The translations under genes and the position numbers were made by a program. DNA of 64,000 nucleotides from positions 930,001 through 994,000 of the forward strand of contig NIVC01000037.1 in NCBI GenBank assembly GCA_002269645.1. Direction: 5' to 3'. The notes beneath the pieces were generated by a model. It ran no database searches and was not told the origin of the DNA. It saw only the letters and a list, made by a program, of their open reading frames with translations. This DNA is from Macrostomum lignano. Lineage: Eukaryota. Positions 132-64,000 of this stretch are shown piece after piece (within the stretch, counting starts at the first letter, position 1; each line of letters starts with the position of its first letter).

Positions 132-169
132 GTAAGTGAAGACTTTGAAGCTGCGGAGAGATGGGCGAG

Positions 170-20495: not shown

Positions 20496-20925
20496 ATGCC
20501 AGCTCGGTTACTCATAATGAGTGGCGTCGGTTTAACATTGCTGTATATTCTTTGGCCATTGTTGGCCAATTGGTTGCGCATTGGCGCCGGTGGCTGGCGC
20601 TGGCGCCGGCGGGTTCGTCGGGCGCCGCCTGGGCTAGTTAATTATGGCAATTCCTGCTATGCTAACTGCCTGCTGCAGGTGCGCTATGCAATATGTAGCT
20701 GGAATTCAGATTTGTATTTGCTGAGTTCAGTTACATAACAGCAACAACAAAAACACAACCAGTACCACTAAAAACAAAAACAACAAACAGCAGCAGCACC
20801 ACCTAACAACAACAAAATCATCATCACCACCACCACCACCAACATCAACAACAACAAAAACAACAACAGCAACAATAACAGCACCAGCAGCACAACAACA
20901 ACACCGGCCACACCACCACCACCAC

Positions 20926-20956
<31 letters not shown>

Positions 20957-21046
20957 AACAACACCACCACCACACCACCACCAACAACAACAACAACAAC
21001 AGCAACAACAACAACAACAACACCACCACCACACCACCACCACCAC

Positions 21047-21078
<32 letters not shown>

Positions 21079-21099
21079 ACACCACTACACCACCACCAC

Positions 21100-21130
<31 letters not shown>

Positions 21131-21164
21131 AACAACAACACCACCACACCACCACCACCACCAA

Positions 21165-21196
<32 letters not shown>

Positions 21197-22124
21197 ACAA
21201 TAACAACACCAACAGCACAATATCAACAACAACAATAACAAAACTACCATCACCTCCTCCTCCACAATCACCATCACCACCACCACCTCTACCACCACTA
21301 ACAACAACACCAGCACCACCACAATCACCACCACCACTAATAACAACAGCAACAATAACAAGACACACACATACATGCATGGATGTCTAGTCTGCGACAC
21401 CCGCGTCTGTTGTCCATTCAATAGGAATGAATATTGAATACGAGCTAGAGGTTTGCAAAAGTTTTGAAACCATATGTATTTATTGATAGAACTCTTATGC
21501 TATTGCTGTGTCTGGCGCAGGCCCTGTCCAGCTGCGACGCTTTCTGCGCCGACTTGGCCAGCCGGGTCGCCTGGGCAGCCGACGTCGAGGCCGACAATCC
21601 TTCGGCTACTGCGGGGTTGTCGCTCTCGGTTCAGCTGAATCGCTTACTGGCTGGATTGCGCGGCGAAGGCAGAGGTGAGGGTGATGGCGACGGTGAGGCT
21701 AGACAGGATTCGGGCGAAGTCGATGCTCTAGAATTGTTGAATGCGCTTCGCGACCGCGAATGGGACCGGACGGCCGGGCAGCAGGACGCACACGAGCTGC
21801 TGGCAACCCTGCTGCAGGCGGTCAACGAGGAGCTGCTGCAGGCTGAGCGACTGCGCAGACAGCCGAGCCTCACTACGGCATCGGGTGGGGGGCCGGACTG
21901 GTGAGCTATCCATCTGTCTGTCCATCTGTCTATCTATCTGTCTGTCCATCTGTCTATCTATCTGTCTATCTATCTGTCTGTCCATCTGTCTATCTATCTG
22001 TCTGTCCATCTGTCTGTCCATCTGTCTATCTATCTATCTGTCTATCTGTCTATCTATCTATCTATCTGTCTATCTGTCTATCTGTCTATCTATCTATCTA
22101 TCTGTCTATCTATCTATCTATCTG

Positions 22125-22155
<31 letters not shown>

Positions 22156-22244
22156 GTCTATCTATCTATCTATCCATCTGTCTATCTGTCTATCTGTCTA
22201 TCTATCTATCTATCTGTCTATCTGTCTATCTATCTATCTATCTG

Positions 22245-22275
<31 letters not shown>

Positions 22276-22549
22276 GTCTATCTATCTATCTATCCATCTG
22301 TCTATCTGTCTATCTGTCTATCTATCTATCTATCTATCTGTCTATCTATCTATCTGTCTATCTGTCTATCTATCTGTCTATCTGTCTATCTATCTATCTG
22401 TCTATCTATCTATCTATTTTTCTATCTTTTTTATTTACAATATACCCTGACGAAGACCCGGTTCGGGTCGAAAATTTGATTCTTTTCTTAGAATTAAAGA
22501 AATTGTGAATTTACTTCAACTGTGTGTGTGGTTTTATTTCGCATTATCC

Positions 22550-22598
<49 letters not shown>

Positions 22599-24609
22599 CC
22601 CATCTATCTATCTAACAAAATCAATGGATGATATCAATAGAAACATCTTTGCAGACAGACAGTTTGTAACAAAGTTTCAATTTGAATTGACACAATGAAG
22701 CACTTGCAGATGTATAGTTCGCAGCGAAGACAAAACAAGTTAAAGCAGGTGTTTCAGGTTATTAGCTTCTCATCTTAATATATGTCATTCAATGGAGGCA
22801 AATTGGCCTCTTCAAATTGGACTGTCAGTTAACAGGGCTCCAAAACTTTCCTCTTTAAACAATTTGAGACGCTGCCAATCATTGAAGTGTAAACCTATAT
22901 AAATATTTCTGAGAATTTTCTTGCTAGACACGAAACACGCGTCGCACCCGGCAGCAGATAATATTCACGGCTGTAAGAACCAAGAACCAGGGACTGTCAG
23001 AACCAGGGACTGTCAGAACCAGGGACTGTCAGAACCAGGGACTGTCAGATCCGAGGATGTCAGATCCGAGGATGTCAGATCCGAGGATGTCAGATCCGAG
23101 GATGTCAGATCCGAGGATGTCAGATCCGAGGATGTCAGATCCGAGGATGTCAGATCCGAGGATGTCAGATCCTGAACCTGCCAGATTTGGGACTGTCAGA
23201 TCCGTAAATTTGAGTTGAGGCAGTCAATTATCAATTCAATCGTCAATTCCCGCAGCGTTACACCGGAGGTTATTGAGGTCAACCATCAGCCAGGGCCAAG
23301 TTCGGCAATAGTGTCGCTTCGCTCTCCGCCAGAGCAGCGCTCGTGGGTCCGCTGCGGTCTAACCCAGACCCGGGTAAAATGTCTGGACTGCGGCGTCTGC
23401 TCCCCCGCTAGGCTGGAGGTTCAGCACTGCGTTAGCCTTTGTCTGCCAACTCGCGGCGACGTCCTGCTGTCCAATGGCAGCGGCCCGGTGCCTTTGCAGC
23501 AGCTGCTGTTGCGGGCATTTCGAGTCGAATTAATTCGTCGAGCCCGATGCGATCGCTGCTGCCAACCGGATGATGATCGAACGGTGACTCTGAGTAAAAC
23601 TACTCGATTAGCCAGGTTTGTGTTCGATTTGAATTTTTAACCAGTAGGTTTTCCTTCGATACAGGCCTTAGCAAAGGTTTCTTTTTATACTACTGAGAGT
23701 TCTGGCTTGGTAACAAGGCCTATTTAGTATTTTGCAAGTGTCCTTAGCAACGGCCTTTTTATTGTTTGGGAAGTGTCCTTAGCAACGGCCTTTTTATTGT
23801 TTGGGAAGTGTCCTTAGCAACGGCCTTTTTAGCTTTTGTAAGAGTCCTTAGCAACGGCCTTTTTATTGTTTGGGAAGTGTCCTTAGCAACGGCCTTTTTA
23901 GTGTTTTGGAAGAGTCCTTAGCAACGGAATAGTGTTATTAGCAACAGCCGCTTTTGATTGGGAAGAGTCCTTAGCAACGGACTCTTTAGTGTTTTGGAAG
24001 AGTCCTTAGCAACGACCTCTTCTTGATACTAGGGATAGAGCTTAGCAACGGTCACATCAGGCACTATACTAGGAATACGGCATAGCAACAACTCATCTTA
24101 ATCGTGAAGGTTTAGAAATAACTCAGTGTACATGTCATACAATGGACTTTCCGCTCTTCCGTCCGCCTAACAGAGCCCCGGCAACACTGGTGCTGCACCT
24201 CCAGCGCGCCGCCTGGAGCGCCGCTCACGGCTGCCCGGTGAAGTCCGGCGCCAGCGTAGCCTATCCGCTACTGCTGGACCTGCGCCAGCTTATGCCCGCC
24301 TCGCCGCTGCCTTCGCCGGTGGACACTGAAAGTCCATCGTCTGGCGACGTCGACGACTTTACGTCGATCGTCGAATCGCATCGACAGTCGATTCCGCTTG
24401 CTAACAAGCTCTACCGTCTCGTGGCCGTCATTGTTCACTACGGAGATGACACCAGCGAGGGGCACTACCTGGCCTACCGGTGGCACCGGCCAACCCGGCG
24501 CTGGTGGTGCATCTCCGACGATTCGGTGCTGCCAGTTAGCGAATCCGCCGTGCTGGCTCTGCACGACGTCTACATGCTATTCTATGAGCAGCTTGTTCCA
24601 TCTATCTGA
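20496..24609 (+). CDS. USP30: USP30-like ubiquitin-specific protease with N-terminal membrane anchor; exons 20496-20678, 21521-21900, 23256-23615, 24174-24609
   Basis: N-terminal hydrophobic segment followed by a basic stretch; Cys box [16 protein letters not shown]; QQDAHE; zinc-finger CxxC pairs; His box VIVHYGD...GHYLAY; SDD. All three GT-AG introns are phase-consistent (0, 2, 2). Confidence 0.85.
20737..21362. repeat. (CAA/CAC/CAG)n trinucleotide mosaic filling USP30 intron 1
   Basis: Directly visible. Confidence 0.95.
21905..22615. repeat. (TATC/TGTC)n microsatellite tracts in USP30 intron 2
   Basis: Directly visible (21905-22430 and 22545-22615). Confidence 0.95.
22980..23200. repeat. 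16-bp (CAGGGACTGTCAGAAC) and 15-bp (CCGAGGATGTCAGAT) tandem repeats in USP30 intron 2
   Basis: 5-aa periodic ORF SEDVR. Confidence 0.93.
23730..24095. repeat. ~35-bp minisatellite with CCTTAGCAACGG core in USP30 intron 3
   Basis: Directly visible. Confidence 0.9.
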
Positions 24610-24754
24610 ACCCGCGTCTGCTACTGATTGCCATGGCGACCGGCTGGACGGCCAATAAGTTTTTTATAGTGCTAATTAGTAATCATTATATTCTTCCCTT
24701 TATCTGTCTTCCCTCTCGTCTGTTTGTCCCGGCCCGGCCCCTTTACTCCTCTTG

Positions 24755-25385
24755 CTTCCTTCTCTCCGTCTATCCCCTCCCCTGCCTATCCCCTCCTGTC
24801 TATCCCCTCCCTTGCCTATCCCCTCCTGTCTATCCCCTCCCCTGCCTATCCCCTCCTGTCTATCCCCTCCCTTGCCTATCCCCTCCTGTCTATCCCCTCC
24901 CTTGCCTATCCCCTCCTGTCTATCCTCTCCCCTGTCTATCCCCCTGTCTATCCCCTCCCTTGCCTATCCCCTCCTGTCTATCCCCTCCCCTGCCTATCCC
25001 CTCCTGTCTATCCCCTCTCCTGTCTATCCCCTCCCCTGTCTATCCCCTCTCCTGTCTATCCCCTCCCCTGTCTATCCCTCCCCTGTCTATCCTCTCCCCT
25101 GTCTATCCCCTCCCCTGCCTATCGCCTCCTGTCTATCCTCTTCCCTGTCTATCCCGACTGTCTATCCCCTCCTGTCTATCCCCTCTCCTGTCTATCCCCT
25201 CTCCTGTCTATCCCCTCTCCTGTCTATCCCCTCCCCTGTCTATCCCCTCCCCTGTCTATCCCCTCCCCTGCCTATCGCCTCCTGTCTATCCTCTTCCCTG
25301 TCTATCCCCCCTGTCTATCCCCTCCTGTCTCCTGCCTATCCCTTCCTCTGTCTATCCCCTCCCTCCATCCCCTCCCCTTTTTCCC
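24755..25385. repeat. Pyrimidine-rich minisatellite (CTATCCCCTCCTGT-type units)
   Basis: Directly visible downstream of the USP30 stop. Confidence 0.93.
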
Positions 25386-25887
25386 GTCTGCATAATCCCT
25401 TAAAAACCTCTTGATCCAGACAAATAATCACCCTGATGTGGATGGTGGCTTACTTTCGTACTGCCAATTTTCATATTTTAGTAACTAAATTAGTACATTT
25501 GATTCATTTGCAAAACTGTATGTCACATACGCGCATTATGTACTGAATGTGTACGCCCAAGTCCTTCGTTTTGCCCATTCTGGATGCTCTATTTTTCTAT
25601 TTTGTTCGTTCGATATTACTTGATAAATTATAAGTAGTATTGCAAGAGATAGCAGAAAGAAATTGGATACAAAGCATTTCATATCGCTCCGCCACACGGA
25701 TCGTTAATTCAATAAGCAATTTATTAGCAATGCCGATGTCTTTGCGAGTAGAATGAAGTCATTTTTTTCATATTTACCTGTCCCAGTAATTAGTCCTGTA
25801 CAAAGTATTAATGTGTTGATTTCGGCCATTTAATGTTTACTATGTTGTTTAAACCCCTATTTTACCCGCACGGCTATCTCTCTTATC

Positions 25888-25938
25888 ATCTGTCTGTCTG
25901 TCTCTCTGTCTGTCTGTCTTTCTGTCTTTTTGTCTTTC

Positions 25939-25983
<45 letters not shown>

Positions 25984-26160
25984 GTCTGTCTGTCTCTGTG
26001 TCTGTCTTTCTCTGTCTGGCTGTCTGGCTGTCTGTCTGAGTGTCTGTCTGTCTGTCTGTCTCTGTGTCTGTCTTTCTCTATCTGGCTGTCTGGCTGTCTG
26101 TCTGAGTGTCTGTCTGTCTGTCTGTCTCTGTGTCTGTCTTTCTCTATCTGGCTGTCTGGC

Positions 26161-26209
<49 letters not shown>

Positions 26210-26210
26210 T

Positions 26211-26263
<53 letters not shown>

Positions 26264-26334
26264 GTGTCTGTCTGTCTGTCTTTCTGTCTGTCTGTCTGTC
26301 TCTGTGTCTGTCTTTCTCTATCTGGCTGTCTGGC

Positions 26335-26365
<31 letters not shown>

Positions 26366-26462
26366 GTGTCTGTCTTTCTCTGTCTGGCTGTCTGGCTGTC
26401 TGTCTGAGTGTCTGTCTCCGTGTCTGTCTTTCTCTATCTGGCTGTCTGGCTGTCTGTCTCTC
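25888..26462. repeat. (TCTG)n-derived microsatellite
   Basis: Directly visible. Confidence 0.95.
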
Positions 26463-26687
26463 TCTTGGCCTTCATATCTTTACCTGTCATTTACCGGTTT
26501 CTATCGGTTTTTACCTTCCCGTACTGTATTGATGTGTTGTGTAGGCTGTAAATTCAGACAAGAACGTTCAAAAAAAGAATTTTATATTTAACATACTGCA
26601 TACTCGCATTTACAGTAACTTCACCTTTTTATTTGCTGCGCAAGAAGCCACGAATATCAGAGAATTTCTGCACGAATATCGGCAGCC

Positions 26688-29200
<2,513 letters not shown>

Positions 29201-31479: not shown

Positions 31480-32200
31480 TCGATTCGGCTACATGTGTGT
31501 GTATCACGATGGCTGTGATGACGTCAAGTTTGTGTCGGCATTAAAAATACCATACAACATGTACATTATACATGTACATGTGTTTGGACGAAAGAAAAGA
31601 GTGTGGTTCATCCAAGTGTGGGATCTCACACGATTCGATAAGCGGATGGGGCAGACAAGGCACCTGGGTTCGTTTTGAACGGAGCCGGTTAGGGGGCACA
31701 TCGAGTCCAGTTGGTACCGTCTGTGGAGAGCTGGTCAGGTGGGAAAATTTATTAGCTATAGTGCTCTAAGGTGCTACGTGACCAAGCCAATATGATTAGC
31801 GGGGGACAATATGGAGACGAGGATTACCTCGTTAAAACTTGCTACGCGAATGCTGATGTATGTATGTGCTTCAAGGGCCGCATCGCGCGGACATTGCTGT
31901 GAATTGGATAAGCAAGTACCGGCCTGAAGGGACGGAATGGTGACTAAGGGATGTTTGAAGTGTAGGTTGTTGTCCGACAAGATATTTTGGAAACTTTTCG
32001 AACCCGAAAACACTTAACACCTGCCTGCTCTACGGACGGCTGCAAACCGATCTAAGAAATCTGATCCCACCGGCTTTATAGCTTTAACAAACAAACTAAC
32101 TAACTAACTATCTAACTAACTAACTAACTCACTAACTAACTAACTAATTAACTAACTAACTAACTATAACTAACTAACAACTGACTGACTAACTCGTGTT
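31480..32200 (+). mobile_element. Possible retroposon (SINE/LINE 3' end) with (TAAC)n tail
   Basis: A GC-richer island ending in AACAAAC(TAAC)n; no coding similarity recognised. Confidence 0.3.
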
Positions 32201-34027
32201 GCTCAAACTATTGTAAGAGCAAAGTAGGCTTAGAGTTATAGTAAAGTTTTTTAATTATAAATTTTATTCAACAATTGGAGCTTAAAAGACCGAAAAAAGT
32301 ATTTTTTTTGTTAACTTTGTTATACCCTGTTACAGTCACAACAATTTTAAAAAAGCGTGTCCCCAAGTGGGTCTGTATAAAAGCAGGGCACCATTGGCAC
32401 ATTGGACACCCCTTATGTTAACAAAAATCGAGTTTTGATCGTTGTTTTGCTTGTATAAATATACTTTGTCTTCGGATTAAAATGTAAATATTTATTTATA
32501 ATTGCACTTTTTCATATACTTCTAACAACCATAAGATTGGTAGTATCAACAAGTTTTATTCTACATTTAAATTCATTTCTTATCTTGCTTTATTGTCGAA
32601 CTACTTTCGGTACGTCATTTTCATTTACCTAGTTGGTGCACTTACAGAAAACATAGAAACATTAAATGCCGTTTCTTGTCCTCAATAAACGTTGGAAAAA
32701 GTTAGCAGCAGACTAGTTGCAGAATTTTATAGCCGGACATGGCATATTTGACAATTTGCAGCTGCTCTCATCTCTGGCTTGTTTATTGCCTTTCCATAAA
32801 TCAACAGCAATGGTGAATGTGAATCTAATCCTTCTCTCTCTCTCTCTCTTCCATAATGTTAATGTTTGATTTGTTGTTAATATGGACTTTTAAAATCCCC
32901 CGTGTCTTAAATAAAAAAACGAATAATTTTTTAAGTTATGATTTCTATCAAAGTGCAAGTAATTAATGTTTTAAAAACATTTAAACTCAATAAATTATTC
33001 ATTCTATTATCAAATAGAATCCAACTCTAGAATCTTTTTCAAGGAAGGAATACTAACTATCCTTAATATTCAATATGCATGATAATAAAGCAGTGCATTA
33101 CTTTATCAATTTAGAGAATCTAACAAGGAAATAAATATAATTTAGTACAGTACCATTGTAAGCAAAAAACCATAAATTTACAGGTACAATTTTTCGTAAA
33201 GATAGATACAGCTGAAAAATTAAAATTTGACAAAAGAATACCAAAAACACTAAAAATGGGGAGAAAAAGTATAACAAACATTGGCATTAATAAAAAAGTA
33301 ATAAATATTGCAGCTGAGCAAATGAAATTAGCAATTAAACAATGCAATGAGTTAAATGATAAATAACAAAGAAATGCTAAATAACATCTTTTGTTCATTA
33401 TTCATTTGTAACTTTATAACAATAAAAATCATTACCATAAGCAATTGTATGAAAAGTTGCTATTAATAGTCTTATGTACTTTATCTCTACTCTAAGAGCT
33501 AACTTTCTATAAATATATATGATTCCTTGTATAAAACTAGGGATTCTTGCTGCAATATGCATATATCACTCTCTTGACCCAAGAAAATTATTGAAAGTGG
33601 TCAACCAATTAGCACAAGGAAATTATAGACAGGGCTGTAATGGTGCGAGTGGTGTTTCGGCACACCAAGTGAACTTTGTCACTCTAAAAAAATTGCACAG
33701 GTTTGTATTGTTATACATGGGAAAGGGGGTCATTAGGCTAGACATTGACTACTGCAACTCCCCCTGCTTCATGAAGGTTATGGCCTTCTTGGGTCTGTCG
33801 TTGTATTAGCCTACTAACAGGCTACAAGAAAAAGCATCCTCTAATAACTATATGAGCAACTTCTAGTTCTTAGCGTCCCTGGCTGTTGGCTTAAAATAAA
33901 AAATGGACACGCAAACTGTGGTGACTTCAATTAAAAAATTCTAGCTCTGTGCAGAGATTTAGCACAAAGTTAAAACTCTGCATGTAAGCTTTGAATGTTA
34001 TTCTTCAATGTTGCTTAAGCTGCACAA

Positions 34028-37000
34028 CTAAGGTTCCCTGGATTCACTAGATGCATACATCACAATGACAGAGTCTCGCGACAGAGAATCCAAGGGAATC
34101 CCCGCTGGGATGAAGCGAACATGGAAGTCGTCTACTTCGTACACAGTACCGTTTGATGCGAATGCGTAGCAGACGTAGTGCCCCTTGTTGGCCGCTTCAC
34201 CGCGATGCACAACGACGGCTTTTAATCGATAGATTGAGGAACGAAGTGATAAAAAATTTTGGATCATAAGCGGAGCGCGATTTTTTGCTAGGTAAGTTGG
34301 TGTTGCGGATTGCGCCCGATAGATTGAGACACACAGCACCTTCGGTTTGCTGAGTATGGTTGTCTTTTCAACAAGCTGGCCTCCTTTGCACGAAGAACAT
34401 GGGAGTAGTGCACTGCGAGGAGTACTAGAGTGACAAAGTGCACCTTCAATTAAGAGTGAGAGATCTTGTCGATCATCAGTGTTAGAGGGAGCAACTGACA
34501 AGCTGTGTCTCGTTGAAGAAACTGCGGAATGTATTGAATTGCAGCTTTCGCAGTTTGAACTGATGACCGTCTGCAAAAAAATGTTTTCTATATGCAGTCA
34601 AAGGCAAGTGAGTATACATGTAGACAAATCAGAGATTTTGCTTTCACTCTCGTCTAGACTTAAAGGATATTGCATTTACACTCGTACGAGTACTTGTACG
34701 CCAGGGGTCCGCAAAACCATGGCTTTAGGGCCATATGCAGCCCACAAAGCCTTTCTGACCGGCCCTCGGTCCTTTAAAACTTCAAAACAACGATTCGGCC
34801 CGCTCAGGGTTTTTGCCTCTTCTCAGATATTTCTTTTCTCTACTCGCTCTTCTCTCTTCTCTCTTCTTTTTTTCTCTTCTCTTTTCTCCTCTCTGCCTTC
34901 CCCCTCCTCTCTTTTTTACTTCATCTTCCTCTTCTCTCTTCCTATTTATTCCCATGCCTCTCCTTTCTCCTTTCTCTCTCCTCATCTCCTCTCTCTTCTC
35001 TGGCCCGCAGTCATGCATTAGATTCTCTATCTGGCCCTTGATGTAAAAGTTTGCTGATCCCTGATGTACACGCACAATGAGCACTAACGCAATCCGTGAA
35101 AATTGAAAATTTGAAAGAGCACGCGGAATTTTTTACCAAAAAGGCAAATAGGTGCTGAAGTTTTGGCAACTCCAGAATTCGTTCTACTGTTTCGATGACA
35201 CACTTCTGTCTGCTTGGGCTGTCCAGGTCAACTTGCGCGTTATACTTATGAAATGCCAACTGCTGGAGTGTAGCGATCATCGATTGCTCAGCGCGGCCGC
35301 TATTGTCTGTTGCCAGCATCCGACTAATGAGCTGAAGTTCTGGTTCATCGCAGATCGAACTTTTTAAGCACATCGGTTCCAGAGATGCAGCAACAGACTG
35401 AATAGCGGCATTGAACCAGCATGACTCTCCGAAATTCCGGAGTCCTGTAGGAGCCCAGGAATCAGGGACTGGAATCAGATCGCTATTTTTTCGCATCTTG
35501 GGGACTTCATCCGTTTCAGAAATTAGAACTTCATCCAACTGAACACTAATTTTGACAGCAGAAGCTGCAGGACAATTCGGTTCACTGGTAGCACTGCCAC
35601 TTCTACCGTGAACCGTTTTTTGTTCACTGCTGGCAGTCATTGTTCTGGGTTTCTTTGTCTTAGGCTGGACGCTAACATCTGCGTCACAGGCTCTAACGGC
35701 CTTTCTTCCCGATGGCTGCTTGCTACTTCGGCGAATTTTCGTTACTGTCGGTGTGCTTTTTGACACGATCGCTGATTGGTCACCAATTGACAGCTTTGCT
35801 GCCAGCACATGACAACAACGAGGTGAGCTGTTGCAATCACATTTCTCTACTGGATGAAGAGCGACCAGATGATTTCTTTTAAATCCTTCAATAACAAAGA
35901 CTTGCCGAGTAGGAACATGAGTGACTCCATTTTTGTCTAAAATCTCACGTGCCAAGTTGGTGTTGACATTGTGTACAGCATCGCATGATGGTCGCTTAGA
36001 ATTAGTCTTTGCCTGTGTCTTGACTGTCTCGAGTTCACTTAGCGTCCAGTGCGGCTTTGGCACATCTAGCTCTAGAAGCCAAGTGTGCTCTCCAACTTTC
36101 CATTCTCCAGTACCGCATTGAGAACGGCGAAATTCTGCGAGACTGCAACACTGCAGTCTCGTAAGCATAAGAACTAAATCTTCGAGTAGAATCTTCTGCC
36201 AGTCAGCTGTACGCTTTAGAATAGCGTTGTATGACTCGGCTGCATTTGAAAAGCAGCCAGAGTCCGGCTCCAAAAGCCCAGCTTTGTACAGCACGAAAGT
36301 CGCAGCATGTTCTCGAATGTCTGGCACTAAGTGTTCACTGAGATACGCAAAAGCACGAGACTCCCAGGTCTTCTTTAGCTCACAGAGCGTCTCATCAAAT
36401 TCTTCATTGGAGACAGATCTAAGCAGGCGCCACAGGTCGCTGACGTAATTCTTTGTGTCACTGGGGGAAAAACTGTTTCCTTTCAACCACCTTTTCAGGT
36501 CTTGAACTAGGTGGTTCCAATCAAAAAGTTGTACGCAGGATTCGAATGTCTGACTGATAGAGTTAACTATTCCAGGCTCTCTATCACTGACGAAAATGAT
36601 TTTCTTGCTACCTTTATTCAAACCAACAGCTTCGCTTAAAGCGCGCATCAGCTCTATTTGCACCTTTGTGGCGCGTCTGTCGTGAATCAGATGCAAAACT
36701 GGAAACGGATGCCATCCGTTTGCACTGGGAATCATCATTAAAAGCGGAGTGACGTAAAAATCCGTCAAATTGAAGGTTGTATCCACCATGAAGACAACAG
36801 GATCAGGACTTGCGCGCAGAACCAATTTGACGACGTCGATACTTTCTTGAATTCCTTGGATAATCGTAACTTCCGGTATTAGCTGCAGTAGTTTGACACA
36901 GCTAATTTCTTCATTCAAAAGACACACGGCCAAAACCTGGTCATTGTGAATCAGTTGACGCTTGCGTTCGTTGTGCATTGCGTTTCGGACCTGAGAGAGG

Positions 37001-38275
37001 TTGCGCGCATTGGTGACTCCTTCCATATCTTTCGGAACATGGCTTCCAATAGAGTCTTTGTACACCTTGGATGGAAGGTCACTAAAATAATTTATGAAAA
37101 AATTAAATTTATGCAGCGGCCAGGCTTATATTGCGGTAAATAATGCTGTTACTTAATAGTGAAAATGATTTCGTCATTGAGAGCAAGTAAGTCAATTAGC
37201 TTTAGTGTATTCATGTAATTGTTTGTCGTGTCACATGTAACTTTCATTTATAATCAAGTATAGAGGCTCCTTCTTTGCTCTTGCTTATCGATAGTGAGTG
37301 ATGAAACTTCAGAACTTGTATTTTTAAATCGACTGTGACAACAGCCCATGTCTTGTCTAACTTTCCAAGGGAAGGTAATAAAATTGTAGAGATGATCGAC
37401 ACATGCACACAATGATGAGTAGATAGTGAACTTTATGGATTTTATAAAGAGTTGCATACGAGGTTAATTCATACCTGAAGTTCTCTTTGAAATTCTGAAG
37501 TACTGATGGATCCGTTCGCTTGTACTCTGATTTATTGCCTTGGTTACAGTTGCCATGAGGAAATGACTCTGCCAGACTGCTGTCTCCAATGTATTGGACA
37601 ACGATGTAGCGAGTGACCTCAAATGATTGGTATGCTACTTTGCGAAAGCCACCGATGCGGCTTCTGTCGGCACTCATTGAGCTGAAGCGGTAGATTTTGT
37701 ACTTAGCCTGTTCTTTTGATCCCTTTCTGGGCGAAAAGTGTGTGCCATCATAGATCCACCGGTATCCGTCATTACGCCAGTCTATGAAGGAATATAAGAA
37801 TTTTATGCTCTACGTTAATGGATTAGCGTGATGTAGAGACAGTTACTGTAAAGAACACTAGTACATTAAATAATTATAAATTTACCGTCTTCAGTTTTGC
37901 CATCTCGTCTTACGACAAATACGGAATTTCCATGTGGTCGATGCGGCAAATGGTTACAGACTTTGGACTCATCTAGTGTCTGGTACAATTCCTTTACTTC
38001 AGTAAGTGAAAGCCTGTTGGCGCATCTATTGTACACCTAGAATTAAATGCCAAACGGAATGCTGTCATCCGCCATTGTAGAACATAACGCTCGTTCACAA
38101 AATTCCTGATACAAGTTTTCAATTTTTGAAACATTTTTCTAAAAACTGGATCCCCCAAATCCTAAAATCAGCTGCTTTTTCAGTAACTAGTAGCAATTTA
38201 GCTTTTTAAACTTACGGGAGCCGAATCGTTGCCAAGATTTTCAGGTCCTGGTGCTGCCGCTTCAAATGATGTCAT
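34028..38275 (-). CDS. MULE transposase-SWIM-USP (C19 peptidase) fusion protein, 1001 aa; exons 38275-38216, 38036-37886, 37781-37475, 37081-35137, 34570-34028
   Basis: Four GT-AG introns with matching phases (0, 1, 2, 0) give a 3006-nt uninterrupted ORF. Domains: WRKY-GCM1/CG-1-like DDWRNDGYRW...PHGN; DDE core VDTTFNL / VSDRE / WNH / NAAESYN; SWIM CDC...CCHVLA; USP Cys box GLRNFGESCWFNAAIQ; His box VVVHRG...GHYVCY; VDD. Confidence 0.88.
34702..35063. mobile_element. hAT/Charlie-type MITE with CT-rich interior, inserted in intron 4 of the MULE gene
   Basis: TIRs CAGGGGTCCGCAAA / TTTGCTGATCCCTG; degenerate 8-bp TSD TTGTACGC / ATGTACAC. Confidence 0.7.
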
Positions 38276-38340
38276 TTGGCTGAAGAATTTAAAGTTTTTT
38301 TTACGTTTTAGAAGTTTTTGTCTCATTTATTTCTTCATTA

Positions 38341-38520
38341 TCTCTACCTATAAAAATCAAAACTCTGTGTGTCTGTCTGTGTGTGTACACTTTTGATCGC
38401 TATGGACTCCCAAACCACTCAACCAAATGACACCAAATTTTGCACCCACCCTAAACTCACTACGGAGAATGTCTTAGGCTACCTTTAAAATTCCTAATAG
38501 TTTTATAAAAAAAATTCTAC
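38341..38520 (+). mobile_element. Non-autonomous Helitron-like 5' end fragment inside the MULE
   Basis: TCT...TATAAAAAT start, (TG/TCTG) microsatellite and CCCAAACCACTCAACCAAATGACACCAAATTTTGCAC motif, as seen in short Helitron/DINE-like elements. Confidence 0.45.
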
Positions 38521-41500
38521 TTTCCTGTGGAGAAAACCTTGCAAGACAGCGAAGAAAATGTGGCAGATGGGGATTGGCATTAGGAGGGAAGAATTTTAAT
38601 CAGATGTTTTCCATCTATAGATAATAAAATTTAGTACTTTTCAAAATCTTACCAAAAGCGGACACACCCACCATATGGATCTAGCTCTTTGCAACAATGT
38701 ATGAGTTCATACTAATATTCATATATTTCTATACATGTACATTGTGAACTCTTGATTTCTTTTAAGACTATGCTGCCTCTAGAATGGAAATTAATAAAAC
38801 TAGAATCGATACCTTTGTATTAAATAATTCTCAACTTGGGCAAACAGATTATATAAAAATGAAAAGCAATGCACAATTTAAACTTTTGGAGCAGTTACAC
38901 TAAAGAAAATTATTATTTTATAAAATTAAGAGAGGCTAATACAATTAGTAGGGCTTGAATTGAATAATATGCTGTGAAGACTCAAACTTGTAAGCCAAGA
39001 AGTCTAGAATTAGGGTTAGCAATTAGGCAATTAGGCGAACTATATACATTAAGGAATGTGTAGGTATTAAATAAATAAATCATGCAGGTGCTAATAGTAG
39101 CTTAAAACCTATCACTTGGTCCCTTAGAACGCCATAATTTTGGACATTAGAATTAAAAAATAGTGTTTTACTGATTGGGCACTTGTTCTTATTGGAAAAT
39201 TTCTCATAAATATAGAAATATTAATATAAACAATACTAATAAATTTGCCTATTAAAACTTTGTGGCATTCATAGGATTTTAGAAGAAGGAAGTATACCCT
39301 GCAACATACGTGCAGAATATTTATGTGCTAAAGGATTTAGGTCTGAAATAAATAATGACAATAAATGTTATGTGAAGATGGTTTATATGTTGTTTATTCA
39401 AAGCATCACATATAACTTTTCAGTAAAAAGACTTCTTGGTCTGTAAGGTAGATTTTTTACTAATATGCTTGCATTTTTTACCTCATAATTTAAATGAGTA
39501 GCACAATTTCTTAAATATCATGACTTGGCAAATTATGCATAAAAATAAAGGTTTTCTTAAAATTAAAAGGATTGTATATAAAGAAGAGACTGTAATTTGA
39601 ACTTTCACTGAGTAGCTATTCCTTTTTTGTTGGTTGAAATCATACAAAAAGTAATTGAACTAATAAAAGAAGAAGCTTGGAAATTATTAATTTAATCATC
39701 ATCTTACAAAGTAAAAAAAACTTTTTGGGTGCAATTTTTTCATCAAATAATCTGCCAATGTATTAACTTTTTTAATATAGAAATACTTGCAATTTGGAAT
39801 ATCCAAAGTTCGTTCTTCATGAAGTAATCCTAACAGAATAAGTTGTGGTTTTTTGATAAGAGCAGAATGCTTCATTTTATGGAAAATTGAGTTCTGACTA
39901 TTAGTTTGATCATTTCATATATCAGGCATATTTAGCATTAAATCGGTACGCCTGTAGTACAGAACCTTCGGGGTAGTAAAATCACAGTGTAATAGCATTG
40001 CAAGCTGCAGTTTTTGCATGTGCGATTATTTTAAAAAATCGAATGCCAAATTAAACATGTACAAAAAACGATAATACAAAGAATATTTAACAAATCATCT
40101 ATCACGAAAGCAAGGATGTCATTTCTATTATTATCAATTTTTTAAATTATTTAAAAGTATCTCCGCAAGTTTATTCTGCATTTTCATATCTAATTTTGTT
40201 ATAAAAAGGGGTGTCCAATGTGTCCAATGTGCCAGTGCCAGCTTTTATACACACCCTCCCCAAGTTGCCGCGTCGGCCGAGTCCAATTAGGCCTAACCCG
40301 CCAAGTCGAGCGGTAGTGGTCAAGCATTGTAAGTTAGTTGCTATCGTATGTGACTCCTATTGATATTAAGTCGGAATAGTTATACATTTTTGTAAAGCAG
40401 AATATTAGAAGTTCGAAATTAGTCGATACAATTTCCAGACCAAGATTTGTGCCCTTAGGTCGAGATCAGAATATTAAGAATAGGCCTAAGTATCAATTGT
40501 TAATTATCACCGTCATTCTTTAATTCATTTCCTTAAGTCTTATTCAGTAAGTTAATTTGGGCTATTCCAAATCCCCATAGTCCAGATCATGCTGCGTGCA
40601 CGCCAGAATGCTTAGAACCAATGCACGCCGACGCCAAGTAGGCCTATGCACACCGATACTATCACCGATTGCAGTTACAACCATAAAGCACCTTTTTGCA
40701 GTTACAACAATAAAGGACATTTTCTAAAAACCTTTCTTATGAACTTGAGTAAAACTTAACTATCTTAGGACCTTTTCTTAAAAACTTTACTTACAAACTT
40801 GAGTAAAACTTAACTATCTTGACATACCCTCCTATATGCTGTACCTTATATTCCTAACAAACTAATTATCTCTTCCCTTACTGGCCTTATACACATTTTC
40901 CTATTTAGAACCTCCAAAAAACCACTCCTCTATTTTATCCTCTAATTATAACAACACTCCGTGCCAAATAACTTTGGTATATGCTATATCTTCTAAAGAC
41001 AGGCCAAATCCAAAAATGCCCTTTTTATGAAATATAAATAATGCAAAACTTAGGGAAGGAATATAACATTTTTTCTGTGAAATTTTTCCGTGACGGTATA
41101 AATAATTTTTGTTTAGACTAACCCAGTGAAAAAAATGATATGGATTCCATGTGGATTTTTCATATGAAATCCATATGTGCATTTGTCTCCGTCCATCCAT
41201 GTGGAATCAAGATATGGATTCCACATGGAAGATCCACATGGAAGTAATTATGTATTTCACATAGAATCCACATTGTCATTGAGTAAGCAGCCATTATACT
41301 GGTTGCCATAATAAATTGTTGCATCCTAAATCACAAAATAATACCAGATCTTAAAATTTCATACGAACCCCAGATCTCAATACTATATAAAAGAAACTGA
41401 AACACAGATAAAAACACTAGCTATAGCCAAAAATATTTCTGCACAAAAATATATTCAAACAGGATGTCTCAATAAGTAAGGTGTATTTATGTACAGTAGT

Positions 41501-48661: not shown

Positions 48662-52189
<3,528 letters not shown>

Positions 52190-58664: not shown

Positions 58665-59712
58665 ATGGCTTCCGCTGCCTATCGAGTGCTGGTGTACGGC
58701 GGTCGTGGCGCCCTTGGCAGCCAGTGCGTGGCCAAGCTGCGCTCAGCTGGCTGCTGGGTTTGCACTGTGGATCTGCAGCACAATGACCAATCGGACGCTT
58801 GCATTGTGGCGCCACGATCTGCTCAGTCGCTAACCGAACAGGAGGCCGCCGTGATGTCCTCGGCTGGCATTATTGACGGCCTGTCACCGCACAGTCTCGA
58901 TGCCATCCTATGCGTTGCTGGCGGCTGGGCTGGCGGCAATGCAGCTAGCAAGAATTTTGTGCGCAACTGCGAATTGGTGAGACGCTGAACTGCTCCATAT
59001 TCATTAATTATAATGGGTCTCCGATTCATCGTTATACAATCTTCACCATTCTTGACAGAGAACTAAATCATCCGAGATTCGCTTCCAAGGTCATTTGAGA
59101 ATCGCCCCAAGCTTTCAATCAGCCAGACAGACAGACACAGACAGACAGACATAACTACATACCGGTATAGCAGAGAACAGAATAGCTCCGATTTTGTGAA
59201 CGACTAACCCTCTTAACGCCGGTAACCAATGAGATTCAGAGAATTGCTCATAGAATGTCCTCAAATCCTCCCAACCTCTCCAGGTGCTGCAGCAGTCCAT
59301 ATGGAGCAGCATTATTGCCGCCCGTCTGGCCAGCCGCTACCTCCGCCCAGGGGGTCTGCTGACGCTGTCCGGCGCACAGGCCGCGGCCTCCGGTGGCGCC
59401 ACTCCCGGCATGATTGGCTACGGCCTGGCCAAGGCGGCCGTCCATCAGCTGACCGCTTCTCTGGCCGCGCCAAAATCCGGCTTGCCCGAGGGCGCCACCG
59501 TGCTGGCTCTGCTGCCGGCTACGCTTGACACGCCGGCGAATCGGCGAGCAATGGGCGACGCCAAGGCTAGCGGATGGACGCCGTTGGAGTTCGTGGCCGA
59601 CCTGCTGCACAGCTGGCTGGTTGACAAGGACGCCAGACCGCCGTCAGGCAGTTTGCTAGCGTTGGTGACGCGGGACTCCGTCACCGAGGTGAAGCCGGTG
59701 ACGGCCGCTTAA
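58665..59712 (+). CDS. QDPR: Dihydropteridine reductase (SDR family); exons 58665-58976, 59284-59712
   Basis: VLVYGGRGALG, DAILCVAGGWAGG, TPGMIGYGLAKAAVHQL (YxxxK) and LDTPANR are characteristic of QDPR. The intron is phase 0. Confidence 0.95.
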
Positions 59713-60714: not shown

Positions 60715-61350
60715 CCCACCAAATGACCTATTGGGTTTCTACGACTCACCAAATGACCGTTGGTTTTTGCTGACCAAATGACCGATAAGGTTTTAGGGTG
60801 ATTGGATGAGCCACCAGATGACCAATAAGGTAGCTGTATGAGTTACCAGATGACCAATAGGGTAGCTGTATGAGCCACCTGATGACCAATAGGGTAGCTG
60901 TATGAGTTACCAGATGACCAATAGGGTAGCTGTATGAGCCACCTGATGACCAATAGGGTATCTGTATGAGCCACCTGATGACCAATAGGGTTAGCTGTAT
61001 GAGCCACCTGATGACCAATAGGGCTAGCTATATGAGCCACCAGATGACCATTAGGGTAACTGGATGAGCCACCAGATGACCAATATAGTGTAGCTGTATG
61101 AGCCACCAGATGAACAATATAGTGTAGCTGGATGAGCCACCAGATGAACAATATAGTGTAGCTGGATGAGCCACCAGATGACCAATATAGTGTAGCTGTA
61201 TGAGCCACCAGATGAACAATATAGTGTAGCTGGATGAGCCACCAGATGACCAATATAGTGTAGCTGGATGAGCCACCAGATGACCAATATAGTGTAGCTG
61301 GATGAGCCACCAGATGACCAACAGGGTAGCTGGATGAGCCACCAGATGAC
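60715..61350. repeat. 32-34-bp minisatellite (GAGCCACCAGATGACCAATAGGGTAGCTGTAT) upstream of SUB1
   Basis: Directly visible. Confidence 0.95.
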
Positions 61351-61396
61351 CGATCCCCGTCAACATTGCAGTGCGATCCCTCGAAGGCGCCCCGGC

Positions 61397-63641: not shown

Positions 63642-63667
63642 CTCGCAGAGACGGATGGAAAAACAAA

Positions 63668-64000
<333 letters not shown>

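What the first reader, a model, noticed from the sequence alone, without database searches (positions are those of the whole stretch)
32369..40257. Intact Mutator-like transposon encoding a transposase fused to a USP (C19) deubiquitinase
Seen in sequence: TIRs, an 8-bp TSD and five phase-matched exons give one 1001-aa ORF. It runs DNA-binding domain (DDWRNDGYRW...PHGN) - DDE core (VDTTF, VSDRE, WNH, NAAES) - SWIM - basic NLS-like linker (KIRRSSKQPSGRK, PKTKKPR) - USP domain. The USP Cys box (GLRNFGESCWFN) lies in exon 4. It is joined across the 35136-34571 intron (LFAFL|TVISSNCESC) to the zinc-ribbon CxxC pairs, the His box (VVVHRG...GHYVCY) and the catalytic Asp (VDD) in exon 5. The ORF track shows these as unrelated pieces. 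Established knowledge: MULE and related DNA transposons are known to carry Ulp1/C48 SUMO proteases and OTU-type proteases. I am not aware of a described MULE family with a USP/C19 protease fused to the transposase. Inference: the element may carry its own deubiquitinase, to protect the transposase from proteasomal turnover or to strip H2A/H2B ubiquitin or ubiquitin-dependent silencing marks from its chromatin.
Basis: partly seen in the sequence, partly recalled or inferred. Interest (0 to 1): 0.88.

Follow-up and report, generated by a model that had tools for sequence, protein, structure and literature searches.

The report
Flatworm Mutator transposon carrying a USP protease
This is a structurally intact jumping gene (a Mutator-like DNA transposon, probably in the flatworm Macrostomum lignano) whose transposase ends in a ubiquitin-specific-protease domain exactly where its relatives carry a SUMO-type (Ulp1) protease, which argues that these transposons need a ubiquitin-family "eraser" enzyme, whatever its fold.

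Summary
The element lies on the minus strand at 32369-40256. It has ~63-68-nt imperfect TIRs and a perfect 9-bp (not 8-bp) target-site duplication, ACTTGGGGA. Five GT-AG exons give a 1001-aa ORF. Pfam UCH (PF00443) scores 51 bits (cut-off 23.9) over aa 718-978, across the exon 4/5 junction. Cys727, His952, Asp968/969 and two CxxC pairs are present.

A 52%-identical homologue (L001) has the same intron positions. A 27%-identical one (L002/P0072) has SWIM, linker and USP in one uninterrupted ORF. A Macrostomum lignano UniProt protein (P0002) uses the exon 2/3 and 3/4 junctions.

The transposase is a MULE by transitive homology. Its own PF10551 hit is sub-threshold, but relatives at E 1e-50 to 1e-75 pass. 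The new point is that the clade's usual architecture is WRKY/CG-1-like DNA-binding domain, DDE, SWIM, then Ulp1/C48 (26 of 150 representatives), often with PHD (14). Only three lineages carry USP there, so this is a C48-to-C19 module swap.

I found no paper describing a MULE-USP fusion. Ulp1/OTU-bearing transposases and one IS5-like transposase+C19 protein (Trichomonas) are known. Verdict: new variant of a known kind. Function is inferred, mobility and copy number untested.

The parts
40257..40265 (-). Target-site duplication, 5' copy (ACTTGGGGA on the minus strand)
   Evidence: Identical 9-mer abutting both TIR ends
40189..40256 (-). 5' terminal inverted repeat (starts GGGTGTGTATAAAAGC; contains GTGTCCAAT x2.3)
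38276..40188 (-). AT-rich non-coding 5' region (putative promoter/5' UTR); no ORF with homology
   Evidence: ORF list and tblastn; composition
38216..38275 (-). Exon 1 (aa 1-20, ATG at 38275); least certain exon
   Evidence: GT donor, phase 0. Exon 2 has no Met and a stop lies upstream in frame. Lies in the unconserved leader of relatives
37886..38036 (-). Exon 2 (aa 21-70): first part of the WRKY/CG-1-like DNA-binding domain
   Evidence: Junction 2/3 is used in P0002, a M. lignano UniProt protein
37475..37781 (-). Exon 3 (aa 71-172): DWRNDGYRW...PHGN core of the DNA-binding domain
   Evidence: AF2 pLDDT 86; best folds are WRKY/NAC DNA-binding domains. Conserved in L001
35137..37081 (-). Exon 4 (aa 173-821): DDE core, SWIM, linker and the N-terminal (thumb/Cys-box) half of the USP domain
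   Evidence: 684-aa ORF; homologues; Pfam
36100..36834 (-). DDE catalytic core (aa 256-500): D273 (36783-36781), D339 (36585-36583), D-x-x-H motif DWNH (36522-36511), E455 (36237-36235)
   Evidence: Motif positions. D339, WNH and E455 are invariant in the 3-sequence alignment, which lacks D273's region in P0072. Relatives pass Pfam MULE
35809..35841 (-). SWIM-type zinc finger CxCx5CxH (aa 587-597)
   Evidence: P0019 SWIM 17.8 bits
35671..35745 (-). Conserved basic linker (aa 619-643, K.RRSSKQ.SG.K...CDADV), shared with C48-type relatives; NLS-like
   Evidence: Alignment A1. Relatives' alignments run to query aa ~655-681
35137..35454 (-). USP domain, exon-4 part (aa 716-821): Cys box GLRNFGESCWFN (35445-35410), catalytic Cys727 (35421-35419), Q-K-C-V-I-E in place of the QQDxxE motif (35208-35191)
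34571..35136 (-). Intron 4 (GT..AG) inside the USP domain; contains a GA/CT-rich low-complexity block (34831-35001)
   Evidence: Same intron position in L001; absent in L002
34028..34570 (-). Exon 5 (aa 822-1001 plus stop): USP fingers/palm with CESC (34552-34541), CSSC (34399-34388), His box with His952 (34180-34178), Asp968/969 (34132-34127)
32432..34027 (-). AT-rich non-coding 3' region; no minisatellite
32369..32431 (-). 3' terminal inverted repeat (reads GGGTCTGTATAAAAGC inward on the + strand)
32360..32368 (-). Target-site duplication, 3' copy

Best explanation
The locus is one insertion of an autonomous-type Mutator-like element (MULE), 7,888 bp long, very probably in the genome of the flatworm Macrostomum lignano.

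Its single five-exon gene encodes a 1001-aa transposase with these parts:
- an N-terminal WRKY/NAC/CG-1-like beta-sheet DNA-binding domain, which presumably reads the TIRs;
- an RNase-H-like DDE core (D273, D339, D-x-x-H, E455);
- a SWIM zinc finger;
- a conserved basic, NLS-like linker;
- a complete USP/C19 cysteine-protease domain with an apparently intact catalytic triad and zinc-ribbon cysteines.

The element belongs to a large MULE clade whose ordinary members carry a Ulp1/C48 (SUMO-type) protease, often followed by a PHD finger, at this same C-terminal position. In this lineage and two others the C48(+PHD) module has been replaced by a USP module. The nearest solved USPs are USP25/28 and USP36.

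Shown here: the anatomy, the homology relations, conservation of the fusion across lineages whose synonymous sites are saturated, and retention of the catalytic residues.

Inferred: the protease is an active isopeptidase that the transposase carries to its own DNA or chromatin. There it would remove ubiquitin or a ubiquitin-like modifier. My preferred targets are chromatin or repair/silencing factors around the element, because the swapped-out module includes a histone-reading PHD finger. Second choice is the transposase itself. Either way the effect would be to favour expression or transposition.

Confidence in the anatomy and the module-swap reading is about 0.9. Confidence in enzymatic activity is about 0.6, and in any one named substrate 0.3 or less.
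For: TIR and 9-bp TSD boundaries.

Gene model: 1001-aa GT-AG spliced ORF. Junctions 2/3 and 3/4 are used in a M. lignano UniProt protein that is 100% identical over 202 aa. The 3/4 and 4/5 intron positions and the downstream USP exon are conserved in L001 at 52% identity. L002/P0072 has SWIM-linker-USP in one ORF.

USP domain: UCH Pfam 51 bits for the window protein and 57 bits for P0072. A profile of the three USPs hits USP28/25/36 at E about 1e-10, with the Cys and His boxes aligned.

Selection: synonymous sites are saturated, yet codon positions 1/2 keep 0.56-0.79 identity against 0.33-0.38 at position 3, in both the core and the USP part.

Clade: 1418 homologues at E<1e-3 and 441 at E<1e-10. 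Relatives pass Pfam MULE and carry CG-1, Peptidase_C48 and PHD. Among 150 representatives, 26 have C48, 14 have PHD and 3 have USP-like sequence; two of those three are transposase fusions and the third (P0033) is a gopher tandem-USP artefact. Window+L001 sit among C48 lineages in the core tree.

Origin of the USP module: the TE-borne USPs are reciprocal best matches, at 41.5/42.4 bits against 33.5 or less and 22.5 or less for any solved USP. The module is not a copy of the neighbouring host USP gene.

DNA-binding domain: AF2 model pLDDT 86, top folds WRKY/NAC.

Literature: Ulp1(+PHD) on Mutator transposases and OTU/Ulp1 on Ginger/Helitron are documented, with a proposed link to ubiquitin/SUMO pathways (PMC2836005).
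Against: - No transcript data were examined for the exon 4/5 junction or exon 1.
- The window protein's own MULE and SWIM Pfam scores are below threshold.
- Only one copy is visible. Its TIRs are about 81% identical with indels. The exact exon-4 ORF is not on record elsewhere. Current mobility and copy number are therefore unknown.
- The AF2 model of the USP domain failed (pLDDT 38), so triad geometry and the ubiquitin-binding surface are unverified.
- The canonical QQD Asp is replaced by Cys in all three TE-borne USPs, so activity or specificity may be atypical.
- The core tree does not unite the USP-bearing lineages (9/100).
- No enzymatic or genetic evidence exists for any function.
Confidence: 0.8

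Rival explanations
1. The USP-fold domain is not a deubiquitinase. It would be a SUMO- or other Ubl-specific isopeptidase, as USPL1 is (my recollection), and would do the same job as the Ulp1 domain it replaced.
For: It sits exactly where relatives have Ulp1/C48. It is very divergent from cellular USPs, with no word-level hits and a best PDB score of 33.5 bits. All three TE-borne USPs replace the Asp of the QQD motif with Cys. From memory, that Asp lies in the region that contacts the Arg-rich tail of ubiquitin.
Against: USPL1 does not appear among the PDB hits; the nearest are ordinary ubiquitin-specific USP25/28/36. The zinc-ribbon fingers that grip ubiquitin's body look intact (CxxC x2). 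The USP7 contact residues are recalled from memory and were not checked.
Confidence: 0.2
2. The protease acts mainly in cis on the transposase. It would remove ubiquitin from the transposase itself, protecting it from proteasomal turnover, rather than acting on chromatin or repair factors.
For: Covalent tethering makes the transposase the nearest substrate. Auto-deubiquitination is common among USPs (general knowledge). This lineage lacks a chromatin-reading PHD domain.
Against: In relatives the equivalent protease comes with a PHD finger, which points to chromatin. SUMO proteases, the ancestral module, are not primarily anti-degradation enzymes. No data exist either way.
Confidence: 0.25
3. 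The USP part is a passenger: a host-gene fragment captured Pack-MULE-style, or a chimeric reading of two unrelated genes, with no role for the element.
For: MULEs are known for capturing host gene fragments (PMC6446971 abstract). The domain contains an intron, as a DNA-level capture would. A host USP gene lies 8 kb away.
Against: The fusion, its frame, its catalytic residues and even the intron position are kept in lineages with saturated synonymous divergence. The fusion is also present at 27% identity in a single ORF. The neighbouring host USP matches only at the His box, at 17.5 bits.
Confidence: 0.04
4. The locus is a fossil or a domesticated single-copy gene that no longer transposes; the intact ORF is kept for a host function.
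For: Only one copy is seen in 64 kb. The TIRs are about 81% identical. Database clusters for P0001, P0002 and P0072 have one member each. One C48-type relative on a long contig has no detectable TIRs.
Against: A perfect 9/9 TSD and recognisable TIRs at both ends argue for a fairly recent insertion. A 7.9-kb unit with long AT-rich non-coding arms is typical of an autonomous MULE. One 64-kb window says nothing about genome-wide copy number.
Confidence: 0.2
5. The element belongs to another superfamily with SWIM-type transposases (Zisupton/KDZ) rather than Mutator.
For: The protein's own MULE Pfam hit is below threshold.
Against: The TSD is 9 bp. Relatives at E 1e-50 to 1e-75 pass Pfam MULE, and one also hits Transposase_mut. 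The D-x-x-H motif and a WRKY-like N-terminal domain are MULE traits.
Confidence: 0.02

Closest known systems
Ulp1/C48-bearing Mutator transposons (Repbase MuDR families of Hydra and lancelet; plant KI-MULE/VANDAL-type and melon/rice MULEs), some with a PHD finger
   Same: Same superfamily and, for the animal relatives found here, the same clade and domain order: WRKY/CG-1-like DNA-binding domain, DDE, SWIM, basic linker, then a C-terminal cysteine isopeptidase of the ubiquitin/Ubl system (PMC2836005).
   Different: The protease here is USP/C19 (papain-like thumb-palm-fingers fold with a zinc ribbon), not Ulp1/C48. There is no PHD finger. No Peptidase_C48 signal is present in the window protein.
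Rehavkus elements (Repbase; treated as a MULE outgroup in PMC6446971)
   Same: 9-bp TSD, TIRs, one long transposase ORF. The PHD finger seen in many relatives of this clade is the Rehavkus hallmark.
   Different: The window protein has no PHD finger, and the element has no minisatellite before the 3' TIR. No Rehavkus reference sequence was available to test direct homology.
Ginger1 and Helitron elements with OTU or Ulp1 domains
   Same: A transposase or Rep/Hel protein extended by a ubiquitin/Ubl-system cysteine protease; the same functional puzzle (PMC2836005).
   Different: Different transposase superfamilies (integrase-like DDE; HUH/helicase) and different protease folds (OTU, C48).
Trichomonas vaginalis XP_001314237.1: transposase_11 (IS4/IS5-type) + Peptidase C19, as cited in PMC2836005 from Gladyshev & Arkhipova 2009
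   Same: The only published precedent I found for a C19/USP domain joined to a DNA transposase.
   Different: Unrelated transposase family, a protist host, and described as a protein architecture rather than a TIR/TSD-bounded element. I could not read the original paper.
Cellular USP25/USP28 and USP36 catalytic domains
   Same: Best sequence matches. Shared features are the C-W-F Cys box, an 'AN-GHY' His box and a (D/N)D third catalytic motif. L003, a stand-alone USP25/28-like protein, shares CWFN.
   Different: Only about 20-30% identity. The USP25/28 regulatory regions are absent. The QQD Asp is replaced by Cys. The domain is short, about 285 aa.

Membership tests
Mutator/MULE superfamily | DDE transposase homologous to MURA (Pfam MULE PF10551 / Transposase_mut) | tested here: met
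   The window protein's own hit is sub-threshold (14.1 bits against 27.6). Homologues at E 1e-50 to 1e-75 pass PF10551 (P0004 33.2, P0005 32.8, P0015 36.0, P0019 35.0 bits), and P0019 also hits Transposase_mut. Membership is by transitive homology.
Mutator/MULE superfamily | Target-site duplication of about 9 bp (8-11) | tested here: met
   Perfect 9-bp ACTTGGGGA at both ends. MULE groups in PMC6446971 Table 1 mostly list 9 bp.
Mutator/MULE superfamily | Terminal inverted repeats bounding the element | tested here: met
   ~63-68-nt TIRs, about 81-94% identical by segment.
Mutator/MULE superfamily | [C/D]-x-x-H motif between the second Asp and the Glu of the DDE triad (a trait I recall from the superfamily literature) | tested here: met
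   D360-W-N-H363 lies between D339 and E455. WNH is invariant in the three USP-bearing sequences.
Mutator/MULE superfamily | N-terminal WRKY-GCM1-type DNA-binding domain | tested here: inconclusive
   AF2 model pLDDT 86. The top Foldseek hits are AtWRKY18 and NAC DNA-binding domains (probability 0.97-1.0, TM 0.63 normalised to the WRKY target), but E is about 0.01 and none reaches 1e-3. Pfam CG-1 passes threshold in relatives (P0005, P0022, P0023, P0070) but not in the window protein. No conserved zinc ligands are evident.
Mutator/MULE superfamily | Demonstrated excision/transposition | not testable with these tools
   Needs genome-wide copies, insertion polymorphism or an excision assay.
USP / peptidase C19 | Pfam UCH (PF00443) above the gathering score across the whole domain | tested here: met
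   51 bits against 23.9, profile positions 1-241 of 254, aa 718-978. P0072 scores 57.2 bits.
USP / peptidase C19 | Cys box with catalytic Cys and upstream Asn; His box (GHY); Asp/Asn third residue | tested here: met
   GLRN722FGESC727WFN, KGH952YVCY and VD968D969 align with the USP36/USP28 catalytic motifs. They are conserved in P0072 and, for the Cys box, in L001.
USP / peptidase C19 | Zinc-ribbon 'fingers' with two CxxC pairs | tested here: met
   CESC 828-831 and CSSC 879-882. L001 has ICEVC...CANC. P0072 has cysteines at corresponding positions.
USP / peptidase C19 | Canonical QQDxxEF motif | tested here: not met
   Q798-K-C800-V-I-E803 here. All three TE-borne USPs have Cys where cellular USPs have Asp (compare USP28 and L003). 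I treat this as a variant feature, not a disqualifier, because Pfam and the triad criteria are met.
USP / peptidase C19 | USP fold and isopeptidase activity | not testable with these tools
   AF2 with a 3-sequence alignment failed (pLDDT 38). Activity needs biochemistry.
Ulp1-bearing MULEs (KI-MULE and similar) | Peptidase_C48 domain in the element's protein | tested here: not met
   No C48 hit in the window protein even at E<=1. It is present in 26 of 150 relatives.
Rehavkus | PHD finger in the transposase | tested here: not met
   No PHD hit in the window protein. It is present in 14 of 150 relatives.
Rehavkus | Minisatellite before the 3' TIR | tested here: not met
   TRF and the direct-repeat search find none inside 32369-34028. 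The (TAAC)n at 32085-32194 lies outside the element.
Zisupton / KDZ | 8-bp TSD and a KDZ-type transposase | tested here: not met
   The TSD is 9 bp and relatives are Pfam MULE. Zisupton's 8-bp TSD is stated in PMC12730594.

The most novel reading that the evidence does not exclude
Ubiquitin-family deconjugation is a required, interchangeable module of this MULE clade. A transposase-tethered isopeptidase would be needed to neutralise SUMO- or ubiquitin-dependent silencing or repair signalling at the element. The USP here would be a fold-swapped functional replacement of Ulp1, possibly itself SUMO- or other-Ubl-specific. If so, this is a natural 'domain-swap experiment' that makes the long-unexplained role of proteases in DNA transposons directly testable.
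Probability: 0.2. Interest if true: 0.8.

Novelty: new variant of a known kind. Interest (0 to 1): 0.58.

Why it matters
Cysteine proteases of the ubiquitin/SUMO system (Ulp1, OTU) have been noted on Mutator, Ginger, Helitron and other transposons for about twenty years. No function has been demonstrated for them.

This clade offers a clean comparison. The transposase scaffold and the insertion point in the protein are the same, but two unrelated protease folds occupy that point: C48 in most members and C19 in a few.

That pattern says selection acts on having an isopeptidase there, not on one fold. It also supplies matched pairs for experiments on activity, specificity and the effect on transposition or silencing. 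The host, Macrostomum lignano, is a flatworm in which transgenesis works (PMC5730564 abstract).

The element also adds a USP-type enzyme to the list of accessory domains carried by MULEs. Finally, it shows that the N-terminal DNA-binding domain of this animal MULE clade is what Pfam calls CG-1, the CAMTA DNA-binding domain. That hints at a transposon link for CG-1.

Tried and rejected
Searches and models that led nowhere:
1. The word-indexed homologue search was used three times, with the full protein, a 3-sequence profile and the USP domain alone. It returned one hit, one hit and none, and did not even recover P0072 or P0002. All family-level conclusions therefore rest on the exhaustive HMMER search.
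2. An exact look-up of the exon-4 ORF to count copies found nothing on record.
3. A metagenome scan with USP-specific patterns found only L003, an ordinary stand-alone USP25/28-like gene. A viral-contig scan found nothing.
4. AF2 of the USP domain gave pLDDT 38, so I ran no fold search on it.
5. I looked for TIRs around two C48-type relatives. L004 has none detectable and the L005 contig is too short. Their transposon status rests on the literature and on multi-copy clusters.

Hypotheses rejected:
6. Zisupton/KDZ, because of the 9-bp TSD and the MULE homology.
7. Rehavkus membership, because there is no PHD finger and no minisatellite.
8. Recent capture of the neighbouring host USP gene, because only the His box matches.
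9. P0033, the third 'USP' hit, is a low-quality pocket-gopher tandem-USP prediction, not a transposase.

Other limits:
10. dN/dS could not be computed because dS is saturated. I used codon-position identities instead.
11. The NJ tree cannot decide between one and two acquisitions of USP.
12. Two literature hits for 'UCH' + 'MULE transposase' were false positives caused by the author name Uchida.

Full report

Yes. The feature lies on the minus strand.

The inverted-repeat finder links the two ends of the interval: arms 32369-32387/40238-40256 at 89%, 32392-32409/40220-40237 at 94% and 32387-32431/40189-40233 at 80%. A gapped alignment shows these are one terminal inverted repeat of about 65 nt with three small indels. 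It starts GGGTGTGTATAAAAGC at one end and GGGTCTGTATAAAAGC at the other. One indel comes from a 9-bp GTGTCCAAT motif that has more copies in the 5' TIR.

The terminal 16-mer occurs only at these two places in 64 kb, against 0.16 expected in shuffles. The TIRs are the only part of the element that matches anything else in the window.

Directly outside both TIR ends lies the same 9-mer, ACTTGGGGA on the minus strand (40257-40265 and 32360-32368).

The exons are 38275-38216, 38036-37886, 37781-37475, 37081-35137 and 34570-34028.

**2. Is the gene model right?**

Three independent lines support it.

- P0002 is a UniProt protein of Macrostomum lignano (A0A1I8H148, "CG-1 domain-containing protein"). 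It is 100% identical over 202 aa and crosses the exon 2/3 and 3/4 junctions exactly as modelled. This also identifies the probable host.
- L001 is a 3-kb contig from a Logan assembly of a sequencing run. It encodes a 52%-identical homologue with introns at the same 3/4 and 4/5 positions. Its downstream exon continues the USP domain through both CxxC pairs.
- L002 is an ENA contig encoding P0072, 27% identical. Here the SWIM finger, basic linker and complete USP domain lie in one uninterrupted 729-aa ORF. So the two halves that intron 4 separates in the window are one domain.

Between the window and L001, synonymous sites are saturated (third-position identity 0.33-0.38). First and second positions keep 0.66/0.79 identity in the DDE core and 0.56/0.61 in the USP part. 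Both modules have therefore been under purifying selection, with the USP part evolving about twice as fast (dN 0.60 against 0.33).

Exon 1 is the weak point. An upstream Met is required because exon 2 has none. But exon 1 falls in the unconserved leader of relatives. I examined no RNA data.

**3. What are the domains?**

*USP domain.* Pfam UCH (PF00443) scores 51 bits against a cut-off of 23.9, covering aa 718-978 and profile positions 1-241 of 254. All significant PDB matches are USPs. A profile of the three TE-borne USP sequences hits USP28, USP25 and USP36 at about 1e-10, with the Cys and His boxes aligned. The oxyanion Asn722, Cys727, His952, Asp968/969 and the two zinc-ribbon CxxC pairs are all present.

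One canonical motif differs. Where cellular USPs have QQDxxEF, all three TE-borne USPs have Q-x-C-x-x-E.

*Transposase core.* The protein's own Pfam MULE (14.1 bits) and SWIM (10.6 bits) hits are below threshold. The exhaustive HMMER search finds 1418 relatives at E<1e-3 and 441 at E<1e-10. Full-length relatives at E 1e-50 to 1e-75 pass PF10551. D273, D339, the D-x-x-H motif (DWNH 360-363) and E455 are in place.

*N-terminal domain.* The region of aa ~21-175 (DWRNDGYRW ... PHGN ... RTxPSVL) is shared by 75 of the 150 representatives. Pfam labels it CG-1 in relatives. With a 37-sequence alignment AF2 gives a confident model (pLDDT 86, pTM 0.77). Its best structural matches are the WRKY18 and NAC DNA-binding domains (probability 0.97-1.0, but E only about 0.01). 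That fits the WRKY-GCM1-type DNA-binding domains usual in MULE transposases. I rate this membership feature inconclusive rather than met.

**4.

The closest full-length relatives, at about 30% identity, have the same N-terminal domain, DDE core, SWIM finger and basic linker. They then carry a Ulp1/Peptidase_C48 domain, often followed by a PHD finger (P0004, P0005, P0013, P0019 and others).

Among the 150 best representatives, 26 have C48 and 14 have PHD. Nearly all proteins with a tail of 290 aa or more after the SWIM finger carry C48. USP-like sequence occurs in only three representatives. P0001 (the L001 lineage) and P0072 (L002) are transposase fusions like the window's own protein. The third, P0033, is a low-quality pocket-gopher tandem-USP prediction unrelated to transposases.

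Homology between the window protein and C48-type relatives runs to about aa 655-681, and the USP domain starts near aa 716. So the two protease types occupy the same slot.

In an NJ tree of the core, window+L001 (100/100 bootstraps) sit among C48-bearing lineages. P0072 does not join them (9/100), but distances exceed 1.4 and deep nodes are unreliable.

The USP domains themselves point to a common origin:
- They are reciprocal best matches. Window to P0072 scores 41.5 bits against 33.5 or less for any solved USP. P0072 to window scores 42.4 bits against 22.5 or less.
- They share the CWFN Cys box and the Asp-to-Cys change.

I therefore read the USP as an ancient replacement of the Ulp1(+PHD) module. 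It was probably acquired once, from a USP25/28- or USP36-like host gene. Two acquisitions are not excluded.

It is not a copy of the host USP gene that lies at 21.4-24.6 kb in the same window. That gene is a genuine USP (Pfam UCH 78 bits) but matches only at the His box, at 17.5 bits.

**5. How it most likely works**

Shown:
- a TIR/TSD-bounded unit;
- a single gene with an apparently complete DDE transposase;
- a covalently attached USP domain with an intact catalytic signature, conserved under selection in diverged lineages.

Inferred:
- The N-terminal domain binds the TIRs and the DDE core cuts and pastes the element, giving 9-bp TSDs.
- The basic linker (KIRRSSKQPSGRK, PKTKKPR) helps nuclear import.
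- The tethered isopeptidase removes ubiquitin or a ubiquitin-like modifier at the site of action.

The module it replaced pairs a SUMO-type protease with a histone-reading PHD finger. For that reason I favour chromatin-bound silencing or repair factors as substrates. Stabilising the transposase itself is the second choice.

A further possibility, at about 0.2, is that this USP fold is specific for SUMO or another Ubl, as USPL1 is (my recollection). The Asp-to-Cys change in the QQD motif may bear on this. From memory, that motif contacts ubiquitin's Arg-rich tail; I did not check this.

Bao, Kapitonov and Jurka proposed that such proteases link transposition to ubiquitin/SUMO-regulated DNA repair (PMC2836005). 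Nothing here discriminates between these options.

**6. Comparison with what is known**

- Ulp1 domains, with or without PHD, on Mutator transposases are documented for Hydra, lancelet and plants. OTU or Ulp1 occur on Ginger1, and OTU on Helitrons (PMC2836005).
- The survey of MULE diversity by Dupeyron et al. lists the accessory motifs OTU, SET, PHD, FLYWCH and SWIM by group. The word "ubiquitin" never appears in it (PMC6446971).
- A 2026 arthropod MULE survey and a broad DDE screen likewise mention no such domain.
- The one precedent I found for C19 with a transposase is a Trichomonas protein that combines an IS4/IS5-type transposase domain with Peptidase C19, cited in PMC2836005. I could not read the original.
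- The remaining literature searches found no MULE-USP description.
- Repbase and Dfam could not be queried.

Rehavkus (9-bp TSD, PHD finger, minisatellite) resembles the PHD-bearing relatives. This element has neither the PHD finger nor the minisatellite. Zisupton is excluded by the 9-bp TSD and the MULE homology.

**7. Verdict**

The finding is real and well read. It is a new variant of a known kind: a protease-bearing MULE with C19 in place of C48, not a new class.

Its value lies in the natural module swap, which makes the function of transposon-borne ubiquitin/Ubl proteases experimentally approachable in a transgenesis-capable flatworm.

Open points:
- transcript proof of exon 1 and the 4/5 junction;
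- copy number and current mobility (single copy here; TIRs about 81% identical; the exact ORF is not on record elsewhere);
- the fold and substrate of the USP domain (AF2 failed);
- whether USP was acquired once or twice.

Interest 0.58.

Noticed in passing
window 21464-24609 (+): A host USP gene, GC-rich and multi-exon. Pfam UCH scores 78 bits on the His-box exon and 26.5 bits on an upstream exon. It lies 8 kb from the element but is not the source of the element's USP, since only the His box matches.
   Followed up: yes
window 26688-29200 (+): A nuclear-receptor gene. The zf-C4 DNA-binding domain is split over two exons and is followed by a ligand-binding-like region. Its exons are interrupted by (GTCT)n-type microsatellites that read as CLSV repeats.
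   Followed up: partly
window 50141-51911 (+); 61334-61771 (+); 59284-59712 (+); 63253-63714 (-): Ordinary host genes: eRF1 (domains 2 and 3), a PC4/Sub1 coactivator, a short-chain dehydrogenase-like exon (sub-threshold Pfam hit, looks DHPR-like by eye) and a DHHC-like ORF. The host exons are about 50-55% GC, while the element and the intergenic DNA are 31-35% GC.
   Followed up: partly
window 8692-9775 (+): An ORF that looks like a reverse-transcriptase fragment by eye, suggesting a non-LTR retrotransposon remnant. Pfam gave no hit at E<=1e-3 for 8753-9775.
   Followed up: partly
window 1-1900; 20700-22500; 24600-26600: Long tandem or microsatellite arrays that produce spurious long ORFs in several frames (LSYLPA..., CLSV..., poly-L/V/C).
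   Followed up: no
window 34831-35001 (inside intron 4): A GA/CT-rich low-complexity block of about 170 bp (periods 5, 7, 15 and 48). It accounts for much of the 566-bp intron. L001's equivalent intron is about 200 bp and lacks it.
   Followed up: partly
window 32085-32194: A (TAAC)n microsatellite of 28 copies, 175 bp outside the 3' TIR. It is not part of the element.
   Followed up: yes
P0002 (M. lignano UniProt A0A1I8H148) against window exon 4, near 36865: The database protein leaves exon 4 after ...LQLIPE, at an internal GT (GAA|GTTACG), and ends PCL*. This is either a short isoform containing only the DNA-binding domain or a gene-prediction artefact.
   Followed up: no
P0070 (1394 aa) and P0118 (934 aa): These proteins carry 4-6 tandem copies of the CG-1/WRKY-like N-terminal domain and no transposase core (P0070 scores CG-1 137 bits). 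They may be domesticated arrays of the DNA-binding domain. The CG-1 (CAMTA) domain may share ancestry with MULE DNA-binding domains.
   Followed up: partly
L004 8001-11000 (ENA ERZ26052287): A C48-type relative (P0022, 999 aa, single exon) on a 69-kb contig has no detectable TIRs within 8 kb on either side. It could be a domesticated or old copy.
   Followed up: partly
L002 1-470: Upstream of P0072, the transposase N-terminal part is broken by at least two frame changes or stops, so that copy is probably degraded even though its SWIM-USP ORF is intact.
   Followed up: partly
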